Positions 10,541 to 12,270 of a DNA stretch of 64,000 bases are shown here, piece after piece. Position 1 is the stretch's first letter. Each line of letters starts with the position of its first letter. This stretch comes from Magallana gigas (lineage: Eukaryota). The notes beneath the pieces are model-generated. The model did not search any database. It saw only the letters and a program-made list of their open reading frames with translations, and had not been told where the DNA came from. Made by a program: the position numbers and the translations under genes. The stretch covers positions 9,548,001-9,612,000 of the forward strand of contig NC_088855.1 in NCBI RefSeq assembly GCF_963853765.1, in the 5' to 3' direction.

Positions 10541-12270
10541 TCAAAACCTATACAATATCCGTTGCCAGAAAGTGTTTGTTTTGAAGGTGAAGGTGCGTTT
10601 GATCCTCAGTTCCCTGTTGTAAGAGTAAACAGAGCGTCGGGGTATGAATACAATCTGGGCCTTACTGGGGCTCGTCATCAGTACTACGTCATATATCCCC
10701 ACACGTCCGCGGGCCGTGAGGGATCCCCGTCGCCTCGGTCGGTACCTTCTGACGTAACTTCCCCTCCGCGACCCTCTCCTGCTCCCCCAACGTCCCCATA
10801 CTCTTTTGTAACCGTTTGATCTCCACACTTTCCCTTTCGATCCCTTCCGTCCCCTCATTCTTTTGGAACCTCTCTGACTCTTTCCTCTTCCGGATCCCCT
10901 CCATTTCTTGCCTTTCGCCGACTTTCTATAGGATGGTCTTTTGGATTTACTTTCCTTTACGCTGGATTTCCCCTTCGATTTTCGTTTTGCGGACCCTCTA
11001 AGAAGTTTTCTGACTATTTTTTTACCATACTTTTTTGCTCTATACGTAAATTTTCCGCGGCTTCTCCTGTAACGTCTCTTGTAACCATTCGTTCGATAGT
11101 ATGACCTGGAAGTTCTGTAACGGTTCCTTCGTCTGTAGCGTCTAGTCCGGCAGCCCCCGAATCCACACCTTTCATATCTGACTGTACTCTAAGTAATAAA
11201 TCGTGATTTTAGAAAATCCTTTACATCATAAAACTTTTTTAAAAGTTCCAAAAAAAACAGTCAAACGCTATAGCTGCATGGGTCCCAGGTCGTCCATCCG
11301 ATTTTTTTTTTCAGACCGGGAGCTACAGACCTGCAGCTAGTCAAGCGCATATTGGAGACATACTATGATATGAAAGATCCAAGCAAAAATCTTGTAAATT
11401 GGTATCTTATAGTTTGGTTTTACGTAAGACATACCGTGAATTTCAAAAGATATGTATACAGTACATTGGAATTGTCGATCCGTTCTGAACTTTCTGAATA
11501 TTATTTAGAACAAAAGGTCTTTAAAAGAATAATTAAAACCCATTGATTTAACCAAATTTCGCGCTCAACTATGAAAAATGAAGAATGACTCACAAATGTG
11601 ATGCTACGAGGCTTCAAACTGAAAAAAATTCTGGCGGCGTCATTTGCATCACCGTTGGCGCTGTATTTGTTGGCTTCTCGATAGCTTGTCAGGATTAGTT
11701 GAGCTTTCCTTAACTCTGTGAAAGGGGCTCTAGTTACCCGCTCTGAAAAAAAACGTAGACAATTAGATTGTGATAAACGTACCCAATATATGTTTCATCC
11801 TTTCCAATATGAAAAAAACTTTTCTCTGCATTCCTTCTTATCCCTTGTCTTTCCGCAGTTTTAATCCCTTTTTTTAAAACACGCACCAGTTGGATTTTTT
11901 TAAACTAAGGAAATTGTGTCTTACAAAAATTGATAAAGTAAATATACTCTTTTGAATTTTTATTATCTCTCAAGAGTAAGAACTCAAGGATCATTAACTG
12001 TATACCGGTAAGTTGTCCATATATCGACTGTCAATTAAACTTTTCAATACAGATTCGTTGATATATATGAAATTATGGGTAAACTATCAATGAATTGTAA
12101 ATAAACTTTGGATAAATCAAAGTACCCAGATAATTGTAAAATTTATGGTCCAGAACATAGTCCGTTCGGCGGGGGGATTTCCAGTAGGAGGAATAGCTCC
12201 GAGCATCGGTCCGGGGGGACCAGAGGTAGGCCACAGCCAACACCAGTACGGTCACACCGAGTCCTCGCAT
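10541..12270 (-). CDS. Secreted, extremely cationic Arg/Lys/Gly/Ser/Tyr-rich protein of unknown family (about 313 aa in the preferred model)
   Basis: Exon 12270-12126 encodes a signal peptide (MRGLGVTVLVLAVAYLWSPRTDA). Exon 11742-11594 has a T-rich acceptor and a gtgagt donor (phase 1 to 0). The terminal exon 11188-10541 is open for 215 aa. AATAAA lies about 50 nt after the stop. A non-coding exon donor sits near 12705. Confidence 0.75.
11271..11339. mobile_element. About 70-bp MITE-like repeat (TAGCTGCA...TGCAGCTA); second copy near 22097-22157
   Basis: Core CAGGTCGTCCATCCGATTTTT(T)CAGACCGGGAGCTACAGACC is shared by both loci, with short terminal inverted repeats. Confidence 0.6.

What the first reader, a model, noticed from the sequence alone, without database searches (positions are those of the whole stretch)
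10541..12270. Hidden secreted hyper-cationic Arg/Lys/Tyr/Trp protein: candidate adhesive, shell-matrix or antimicrobial precursor
Seen: the ORF track shows only two unlinked fragments. The reading frame actually opens at a splice acceptor at 11188 and runs 215 aa (STVRYERCGFGGCRTRRYRRRNRYRTSRSYYRTNGYKRRYRR..WRSNGYKRVWGRWGSRRGSRRGSYVRRYRPRRRG..ILYRF). My hand count for this exon is 51 R + 27 K against 4 acidic residues, with 17 Y, 5 W, a repeated NGYKR motif and many dibasic sites. It joins in phase to a signal-peptide exon through a 149-nt exon and has a downstream AATAAA. Known: mussel foot proteins such as Mfp-3 and Mfp-5 and Lys/Arg-rich shell matrix proteins are secreted, cationic and Tyr(DOPA)-rich; protamine-like proteins are cationic but lack signal peptides. 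Inference: this may be an undescribed oyster cement, shell or periostracum protein, or a precursor cleaved into cationic antimicrobial peptides. I recognise no family.
Basis: partly seen in the sequence, partly recalled or inferred. Interest (0 to 1): 0.82.

Follow-up and report, generated by a model that had tools for sequence, protein, structure and literature searches.

The report
Oyster-only secreted hyper-basic orphan protein
This is a real, expressed, single-copy Pacific-oyster gene, already in public annotation as "uncharacterized protein", that encodes a secreted protein with an extremely positively charged middle between two conserved end modules. It is found only in true oysters and its function has not been tested.

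Summary
The last exon (11188-10541, minus strand) has exactly 51 R, 27 K, 4 acidic residues, 17 Y, 5 W and two NGYKR. Both proposed junctions (12126/11742 and 11594/11188) occur in all 39 public transcript contigs I aligned.

The gene is not hidden. Its 313-aa product equals RefSeq XP_019929582.3, "uncharacterized protein [Magallana gigas]".

No family could be assigned: no Pfam match, no PDB sequence match, and AlphaFold models too poor to use. An exhaustive HMMER search of 1.84 billion representative proteins found full-length relatives only in Magallana and Saccostrea. The gene is single copy.

The N and C modules are under strong purifying selection (dN/dS 0.16 and 0.07). The roughly 150-aa basic segment evolves fast (0.62, with indels) but keeps a net charge of +61 to +82 and its Tyr/Trp content.

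Transcripts come from whole juveniles, spat and a stress-run series whose checked temperature runs are adult gill. That rules out a testis-only protamine and weakens a strictly shell or cement role.

My favoured reading is an extracellular polyanion binder, most likely for mucosal host defence. This is inferred, not shown. Earlier notes of this scan describe other oyster-only secreted cationic families in this genome, but not this gene. Interest is moderate.

The parts
14760..14874 (-). Alternative upstream non-coding 5' exon (minor transcript form). The donor GTAAGT follows 14760.
   Evidence: Contigs L001 and L018 splice 14760 to 12836. L018 runs on contiguously up to 15805.
12705..12836 (-). 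Main non-coding 5' exon. Most contigs begin between 12811 and 12733. The donor GT follows 12705.
   Evidence: 36 M. gigas-type contigs join 12705 to 12288.
12126..12288 (-). First coding exon. The ATG is at 12270. The predicted signal peptide is residues 1-24 (12270-12199), followed by the start of the conserved N module.
   Evidence: Translation. The hydrophobic core has a mean Kyte-Doolittle value of 2.8-3.3, and T-D-A or S-D-G precedes the predicted cut in four species. The junctions are present in all contigs.
11594..11742 (-). Second coding exon (149 nt), the most conserved part of the N module. It includes the invariant motif GDANDAA-IFFSLKP.
   Evidence: Translation, alignments A3 and A4, and dN/dS of 0.155 for the N module.
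10727..11167 (-). Polycationic low-complexity segment, residues 106-252. It opens with the invariant C-x4-C and is 42% R+K with net charge +64, 12 Y and 4 W.
   Evidence: dN/dS is 0.62, with three indels against the congener. There is no DNA tandem repeat.
10997..11050 (-). Conserved amphipathic block inside the basic segment, residues 145-162, with the core KY-x2-KIVRK invariant in four species.
   Evidence: It has the highest helical hydrophobic moment of the mature protein, 0.75. Invariant columns K151-K159 are in A3.
10544..10726 (-). Conserved C-terminal module, residues 253-313, predicted to be rich in beta strands. The stop codon is at 10541-10543.
   Evidence: dN/dS is 0.069. See alignment A5. 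The strand prediction comes from the low-confidence AF2 model.
10473..10543 (-). Stop codon (10541-10543) and the 3' UTR that follows it, with AATAAA at 10493-10488 and the transcript end at about 10473-10470.

Best explanation
Shown: a single-copy, spliced, expressed gene of true oysters (Magallana and Saccostrea) encodes a 313-aa pre-protein. It consists of a 24-aa signal peptide, a conserved N module (about residues 25-105), an invariant C-x4-C, a fast-evolving polycationic segment of about 150 aa, and a conserved C module (253-313). The predicted mature protein is about 34.7 kDa, with pI about 11.8 and net charge about +80.

Inferred mechanism: the protein is secreted and acts outside the cell as a polyanion binder. 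The Arg/Lys/Tyr/Trp-rich disordered segment would supply multivalent electrostatic and cation-pi contacts. The two conserved modules would supply a specific fold for docking, oligomerisation or a pro-domain role.

Favoured target: anionic microbial surfaces at mucosal epithelia. That would make it a host-defence polycation, acting whole or after cleavage at basic sites, with the conserved amphipathic block at 145-162 as the likeliest membrane-active core.
For: The gene and its junctions are supported.

The signal-peptide features are conserved in four species.

The charge and aromatic content of the basic segment are conserved between Magallana and Saccostrea (+61 to +82 net, 9-12 Y, 4-5 W, at most 1 acidic residue), although full-length protein identity between the two genera is only about 40% and the segment's length varies from 125 to 153 aa.

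The selection pattern of conserved flanks (dN/dS 0.07-0.16) and a fast-evolving cationic core (0.62, with indels) is the one known from cathelicidin-type and mussel antimicrobial-peptide precursors (background from PMC5577615 and PMC4558851, as listed).

The conserved block at 145-162 has the top hydrophobic moment of the mature protein.

Transcripts come from whole juvenile flesh (SRR6679093), spat soft body (SRR24058832) and the abiotic-stress series of the oyster genome project (SRR334274 and SRR334282). The temperature runs of that series are gill.
Against: No activity, localisation or processing data exist. Secretion is inferred by heuristics only, because SignalP was not available.

The precursor has no anionic pro-piece to neutralise the charge, unlike most antimicrobial-peptide precursors.

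The gene is single copy, whereas invertebrate antimicrobial-peptide families are usually multigenic.

The strongest conservation lies outside the cationic part, so the key function may sit in the unknown N/C fold.

Tissue evidence is only the presence of assembled contigs, not expression levels. That SRR334274 and SRR334282 are gill is inferred from the series, not read for those runs.

Fast sequence turnover with conserved composition is equally typical of disordered matrix proteins.
Confidence: 0.4

Rival explanations
1. Structural matrix or adhesive protein. It would be a cationic component of shell, periostracum or cement that binds acidic or phosphorylated matrix proteins, sulfated polysaccharides or mineral, possibly by complex coacervation, with Tyr/Trp giving cation-pi cohesion or DOPA chemistry.
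For: It is secreted, polycationic, rich in Tyr, Trp, Gly and Ser, and disordered. It is restricted to Ostreidae, the cementing oysters. Its composition is conserved while its sequence is not. It is present in whole spat and juveniles that are actively building shell.
Against: Tyr is only about 8 mol%, against 20-30 mol% in Mfp-3 and Mfp-5 (background knowledge). No foot-protein or shell-matrix Pfam model matches. Full-length transcripts assemble from a stress series whose checked runs are gill. It is not the uncharacterised footprint protein Cg_fmp named in the larval footprint proteome paper, which has poly-Glu and poly-Pro runs. The other 41 proteins of that study were not checked. No paper cites its accessions.
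Confidence: 0.25
2. Prohormone-type precursor. Convertases would cut the many basic sites, releasing the conserved N- or C-terminal pieces as signalling peptides, with the basic stretch acting as a spacer.
For: It has a signal peptide, 24 dibasic pairs and 5 R-x-K/R-R motifs. The ends are the most conserved parts. An arginine-rich, bivalve-specific neuropeptide precursor (Cragi-SLRFamide) does exist in C. gigas.
Against: There are no repeated conserved peptide units, no acidic spacers and no C-terminal Gly for amidation, since the protein ends directly in F. It contains no SLRF motif, so it is not that precursor. The conserved pieces are 60-80 aa with predicted secondary structure, which is more like folded modules than peptides (low confidence).
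Confidence: 0.08
3. Intracellular nucleic-acid-binding protein of the protamine-like, SR/RGG-like or nucleolar kind. The hydrophobic N-terminus would then not be a cleaved signal peptide.
For: The RS, RG and RGS motifs and the extreme basicity resemble nucleic-acid binders. An automatic pipeline even named the S. cucullata orthologue 'luc7-like protein 3'.
Against: The N-terminal hydrophobic core and its cleavage-site pattern are conserved in four species. No LUC7, linker-histone, protamine or RRM Pfam model matches at E up to 10. It is expressed in spat and juveniles without mature gonads.
Confidence: 0.05
4. A young orphan transcript with little or no function.
For: It has a narrow taxonomic range, no known domain and a low-complexity core.
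Against: The end modules show dN/dS of 0.07-0.16. The full architecture is kept between Magallana and Saccostrea. The reading frame is intact in every one of the 39 transcript contigs, which represent 6 M. gigas-type protein alleles and one 303-aa form from the congener.
Confidence: 0.03

Closest known systems
Cathelicidin-type and mussel (myticalin, MgCRP-I) antimicrobial-peptide precursors
   Same: A signal peptide, conserved non-cationic parts and a fast-evolving, strongly cationic part rich in Arg, Tyr and Trp. Both are lineage-restricted.
   Different: There is no cathelin or other known pro-domain and no anionic pro-piece. The cationic part is about 150 aa and sits in the middle of the protein, not at an end. 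The gene is single copy. Activity has not been tested.
Mussel foot proteins Mfp-3 and Mfp-5, and sandcastle-worm cationic cement proteins
   Same: Secreted, basic, disordered proteins containing Gly, Lys, Arg and Tyr. They could pair with polyanions.
   Different: Tyr is about 8 mol% rather than 20-30 mol%. The protein is far larger and carries two conserved non-repetitive modules. There is no sequence or Pfam similarity. Transcripts are found outside foot or mantle-only samples.
Basic molluscan shell-matrix proteins (KRMP and shematrin types)
   Same: Secreted, lineage-restricted, basic low-complexity regions with Gly and Tyr.
   Different: No homology was detected in the exhaustive HMMER search. 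There are no Gly/Tyr repeat arrays and no DNA tandem repeats. It is Arg-dominated rather than Lys-dominated.
Bivalve protamine-like sperm nuclear basic proteins
   Same: Extreme Arg/Lys content and pI.
   Different: This protein has a signal peptide and no histone-H1 fold signal. It is expressed in immature spat and juveniles and, by inference, in gill.

Membership tests
Mussel foot protein Mfp-3/Mfp-5 type adhesives | Sequence or Pfam similarity to the foot-protein families | tested here: not met
   No Pfam family at E up to 10 for the exon pieces or for four full-length orthologues. No such relative appeared among 1.84 billion representatives.
Mussel foot protein Mfp-3/Mfp-5 type adhesives | Very high Tyr/DOPA content (about 20-30 mol%) in a small 5-10 kDa protein (background knowledge) | tested here: not met
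   17 Y in 215 aa of the last exon, about 8 mol% overall. The mature protein is about 34.7 kDa. DOPA itself cannot be tested here.
Mussel foot protein Mfp-3/Mfp-5 type adhesives | Expression in the foot or adhesive gland | not testable with these tools
Contigs come from whole body and from a series whose checked runs are gill.
Protamine-like sperm nuclear basic proteins | No signal peptide; nuclear; testis-specific | tested here: not met
   A conserved signal-peptide-like N-terminus. Transcripts are present in 2-4 mm spat and in 4-month-old, 1-g juveniles.
Protamine-like sperm nuclear basic proteins | Histone H1 / linker-histone globular domain (PL-I type) | tested here: not met
   No Pfam hit at E up to 10.
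Cathelicidin-like antimicrobial-peptide precursors | Cathelin (cystatin-like) pro-domain | tested here: not met
   No Pfam hit. No PDB sequence hit better than E 0.67. The AF2 models were too poor to test the fold.
Cathelicidin-like antimicrobial-peptide precursors | A conserved pro-region with a hypervariable cationic peptide | tested here: met
   dN/dS is 0.155 and 0.069 in the flanks against 0.62, with indels, in the cationic segment. This shows a resemblance in pattern, not membership.
Cathelicidin-like antimicrobial-peptide precursors | Antimicrobial activity of the released peptide | not testable with these tools
   This needs a bench assay.
LUC7-like protein 3 (the name given to the S. 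cucullata orthologue) | LUC7 N-terminal zinc-finger domain | tested here: not met
   P0031 has no Pfam family at E up to 10. The name most likely reflects only the Arg/Ser-rich composition.
Cragi-SLRFamide arginine-rich neuropeptide precursor | C-terminal SLRF-Gly amidation motif | tested here: not met
   The protein ends directly in ...YRF followed by the stop codon and contains no SLRF.

The most novel reading that the evidence does not exclude
The protein founds an undescribed, Ostreidae-specific class of secreted polycations. An unknown two-part fold (N and C modules) would carry a roughly 150-aa Arg/Lys/Tyr/Trp brush that either kills or agglutinates microbes on gill mucosa, or serves as the missing cationic partner of the acidic phosphoproteins in oyster cement and shell by complex coacervation.
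Probability: 0.3. Interest if true: 0.6.

Novelty: new variant of a known kind. Interest (0 to 1): 0.4.

Why it matters
Oysters are major aquaculture animals and reef builders, and both their mucosal defence and their cement chemistry are poorly understood. A secreted protein with pI near 12 and net charge of about +80, conserved for the whole Magallana-Saccostrea divergence, must have a strong polyanionic partner. Identifying that partner would give either a new host-defence molecule or a new component of a wet adhesive or biomineral. The case is tempered by two facts. The gene is already annotated, and oyster genomes hold many lineage-restricted secreted cationic families. Other notes of this scan describe several of these, so the protein is unusual in degree more than in kind.

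Tried and rejected
Searches and models that gave nothing:
- Pfam on the exon pieces and on four orthologues: no match.
- PDB profile search: best E 0.67.
- ESM Atlas, whole protein and N module: no usable hit.
- AlphaFold2 on the six-sequence alignment gave pLDDT 41.5, and on the N module alone 46.7. Both are unusable.
- Foldseek against the PDB with the poor model: best E 0.71 and TM about 0.1, which is meaningless.
- N and C modules as an internal duplication: hhalign probability 1%, rejected.
- Paralogues in the same genome, searched with the full protein and with N- and C-module profiles: only the gene's own locus.
- DNA tandem repeats underlying the basic segment: none of note.

McDonald-Kreitman test: Dn/Ds 40/31 against Pn/Ps 7/16, p = 0.054. 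I discard it because the ingroup contigs were retrieved by exact identity to six protein alleles, which under-samples non-synonymous polymorphism.

Literature:
- Search by accessions: no papers.
- Search by the mis-given name: no papers.
- Most SRA run prefixes could not be traced to papers.
- Cg_fmp, the larval footprint protein, is a different protein.

Tools not available or not informative:
- The metagenome fragment P0030 (L043) holds only an exon-1-like piece, and P0029 could not be located.

Full report
**1. The observation**

On the minus strand the frame opening at 11188 runs 215 codons to a stop at 10543-10541. A script count gives 51 R, 27 K, 1 D + 3 E, 17 Y, 5 W, 24 G and 25 S, with NGYKR twice and 24 overlapping dibasic pairs.

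The proposed exons 12270-12126 (145 nt of CDS) and 11742-11594 (149 nt) have canonical GT/AG borders and join in phase.

**2. Is it a gene?**

I searched the last exon by reference against the 5.8-billion-protein collection. It returned two clusters of 313 and 303 aa that contain the three exons joined exactly as proposed.

The contig encoding the first cluster (L001, SRR22252663, 1258 nt) aligns to the window as five blocks: 14874-14760, 12836-12705, 12292-12126, 11743-11594 and 11188-10497. Thirty-eight further transcript contigs, each from a different run, show the same coding junctions and end at about 10473-10470. That is 15-20 nt past the AATAAA at 10493-10488.

The main 5' exon is non-coding and ends at 12705 (donor GT). 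The acceptor AG precedes 12288. A minor form adds an upstream exon that ends at 14760.

On method: the joined model was never typed or sent to a search. Full-length searches used stored database proteins (P0001, P0004). In one search a script concatenated the three exon ranges in memory, only to check identity with P0004 (identical) and to compute substitution rates.

The masked N run at 6267-6432 was left alone.

**3. Identity**

The product is letter-for-letter P0004, which is XP_019929582.3 / XP_034337704.2, "uncharacterized protein [Magallana gigas]". Near-identical entries are C. angulata LOC128190107 and UniProt A0A8W8JTE9. So the gene is annotated but uncharacterised, not hidden. No paper in the searchable library cites these accessions.

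The genome is 564 Mb in 29 contigs, and the gene is single copy. Neither the whole protein nor profiles of its N or C module find a second locus.

**4. Relatives**

An exhaustive HMMER search of 1.84 billion representatives gave seven hits:
- the congener cluster P0002 (88% identity);
- one full-length Saccostrea echinata protein (P0025, XP_061196377.1, 42% identity over the whole length);
- five exon-sized fragments. Three are ORFs matching this locus, and two come from oyster DNA in metagenomes.

A profile word search added the S. cucullata orthologue P0031, mis-named "luc7-like protein 3". Nothing was found in other bivalves or beyond.

No family could be assigned:
- No Pfam family matches any orthologue at E up to 10.
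- The PDB profile search gave no hit better than E 0.67.
- The ESM Atlas gave no usable hit.
- AlphaFold2 on the shallow alignments gave pLDDT 41.5 and 46.7.

The fold of the conserved modules remains unknown. The only hint is a weakly predicted alpha/beta arrangement drawing strands from both ends.

**5. Anatomy and evolution**

The protein has five parts:
- Residues 1-24 form a signal-peptide-like segment. Its hydrophobic core has a mean Kyte-Doolittle value of 2.8-3.3, and small residues sit at -3 and -1 in all four species. This is a heuristic; SignalP was not available.
- Residues 25-105 form a conserved N module.
- An invariant C-x4-C follows at 106-111.
- Residues 106-252 are the polycationic segment.
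- Residues 253-313 form a conserved, probably beta-rich C module.

Against the congener, synonymous divergence (dS) is about 0.19. dN/dS is 0.155 for the N module, 0.069 for the C module and 0.62 for the basic segment, which also carries three indels.

Across Magallana and Saccostrea the basic segment nevertheless keeps 42-58% R+K, net charge +61 to +82, at most one acidic residue, 9-12 Tyr and 4-5 Trp. Two blocks within it stay invariant: RYR-x-R-x-RY (115-122) and KY-x2-KIVRK (151-159). The second lies in the stretch with the highest helical hydrophobic moment of the mature protein, 0.75.

The segment is not built from DNA tandem repeats, and the N and C modules are not duplicates of each other. 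The predicted mature protein is about 34.7 kDa, with pI about 11.8, net charge about +80 and no N-glycosylation sequon.

**6. Where it is expressed**

The evidence here is the presence of assembled contigs, not expression levels.
- SRR6679093 is a stranded mRNA library from the powdered whole flesh of 4-month-old juveniles (PMC6182001).
- SRR24058832 is the soft body of 2-4 mm spat (PMC10416452).
- SRR334274 and SRR334282 belong to the abiotic-stress series SRR334262-282 of the oyster genome project (PMC9118643). The temperature runs of that series are gill (PMC8004665). Gill for these two runs is therefore an inference.

Most other runs could not be traced to a paper. This is enough to exclude a testis-only protamine-like role. 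It also makes a strictly mantle or foot-gland product less likely.

**7. Explanation**

What is shown is a secreted-type, single-copy, oyster-restricted protein under purifying selection. Its charge is conserved rather than its sequence.

What I infer is an extracellular polyanion binder. My favoured target is microbial surfaces at mucosal epithelia. Three things point that way: the selection pattern, the Arg/Trp/Tyr chemistry with its conserved amphipathic block, and the expression in gill-type and whole-body samples.

The main rival is a matrix, cement or shell polycation, which the data do not exclude. Prohormone, intracellular nucleic-acid-binding and non-functional readings are less likely, for the reasons given under rivals. 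I put about 0.4 on the favoured reading, and about 0.95 on the gene and protein description itself.

**8. Novelty and score**

The gene is in public annotation, so its existence is not new. The family is unnamed, has no detectable homologues outside Ostreidae and has no literature. Its architecture, two conserved modules split by a roughly 150-aa hyper-basic segment, matches no described family that I could test.

Lineage-restricted secreted cationic proteins are a known kind in molluscs. Earlier notes of this scan list several other oyster-only cationic families in this same genome. I take these as unverified context. They concern other genes, and this gene was not noted on other DNA.

I therefore class it as a new variant of a known kind, with moderate interest.

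Noticed in passing
P0031 (Saccostrea cucullata orthologue; not in the window): The public name 'luc7-like protein 3' looks like a mis-annotation driven by Arg/Ser-rich composition. The protein has no LUC7 or any other Pfam domain and aligns end to end with this oyster family.
   Followed up: yes
window 14760-15805 (-): Contig L018 (SRR8489867) continues unspliced for 1044 nt upstream of the alternative 5' exon. This may be a distal promoter or read-through. Two short ORFs called on the opposite strand there have no Pfam match.
   Followed up: partly
window 853-1257 and 1514-1960 (-): These are exons of a Cys/Met-metabolism PLP-dependent enzyme (PF01053, E about 3e-10 each), probably a cystathionine-lyase-type gene. 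It lies downstream on the same strand and is unrelated to the finding.
   Followed up: partly
window 6825-7400 (-): A 191-aa ORF that another first-stage note calls an intronless minimal HAD phosphatase. My Pfam scan found no family at E up to 0.01.
   Followed up: partly
window 6267-6432: A run of 166 N (an assembly gap or masked stretch).
   Followed up: no
L043:1-160 and L043:824-960 (JGI metagenome 3300045951): This contig is oyster-like genomic DNA in a metagenome. It carries an exon-1-like piece of this family, and its intron holds two copies of a repeat-derived ORF (motif ...SCHTCCDTGPRFF...).
   Followed up: no
Protein cluster of P0001: The cluster holds 81 distinct protein sequences at 90% identity or more for a single-copy gene. 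This indicates high allelic diversity, much of it probably in the basic segment.
   Followed up: partly
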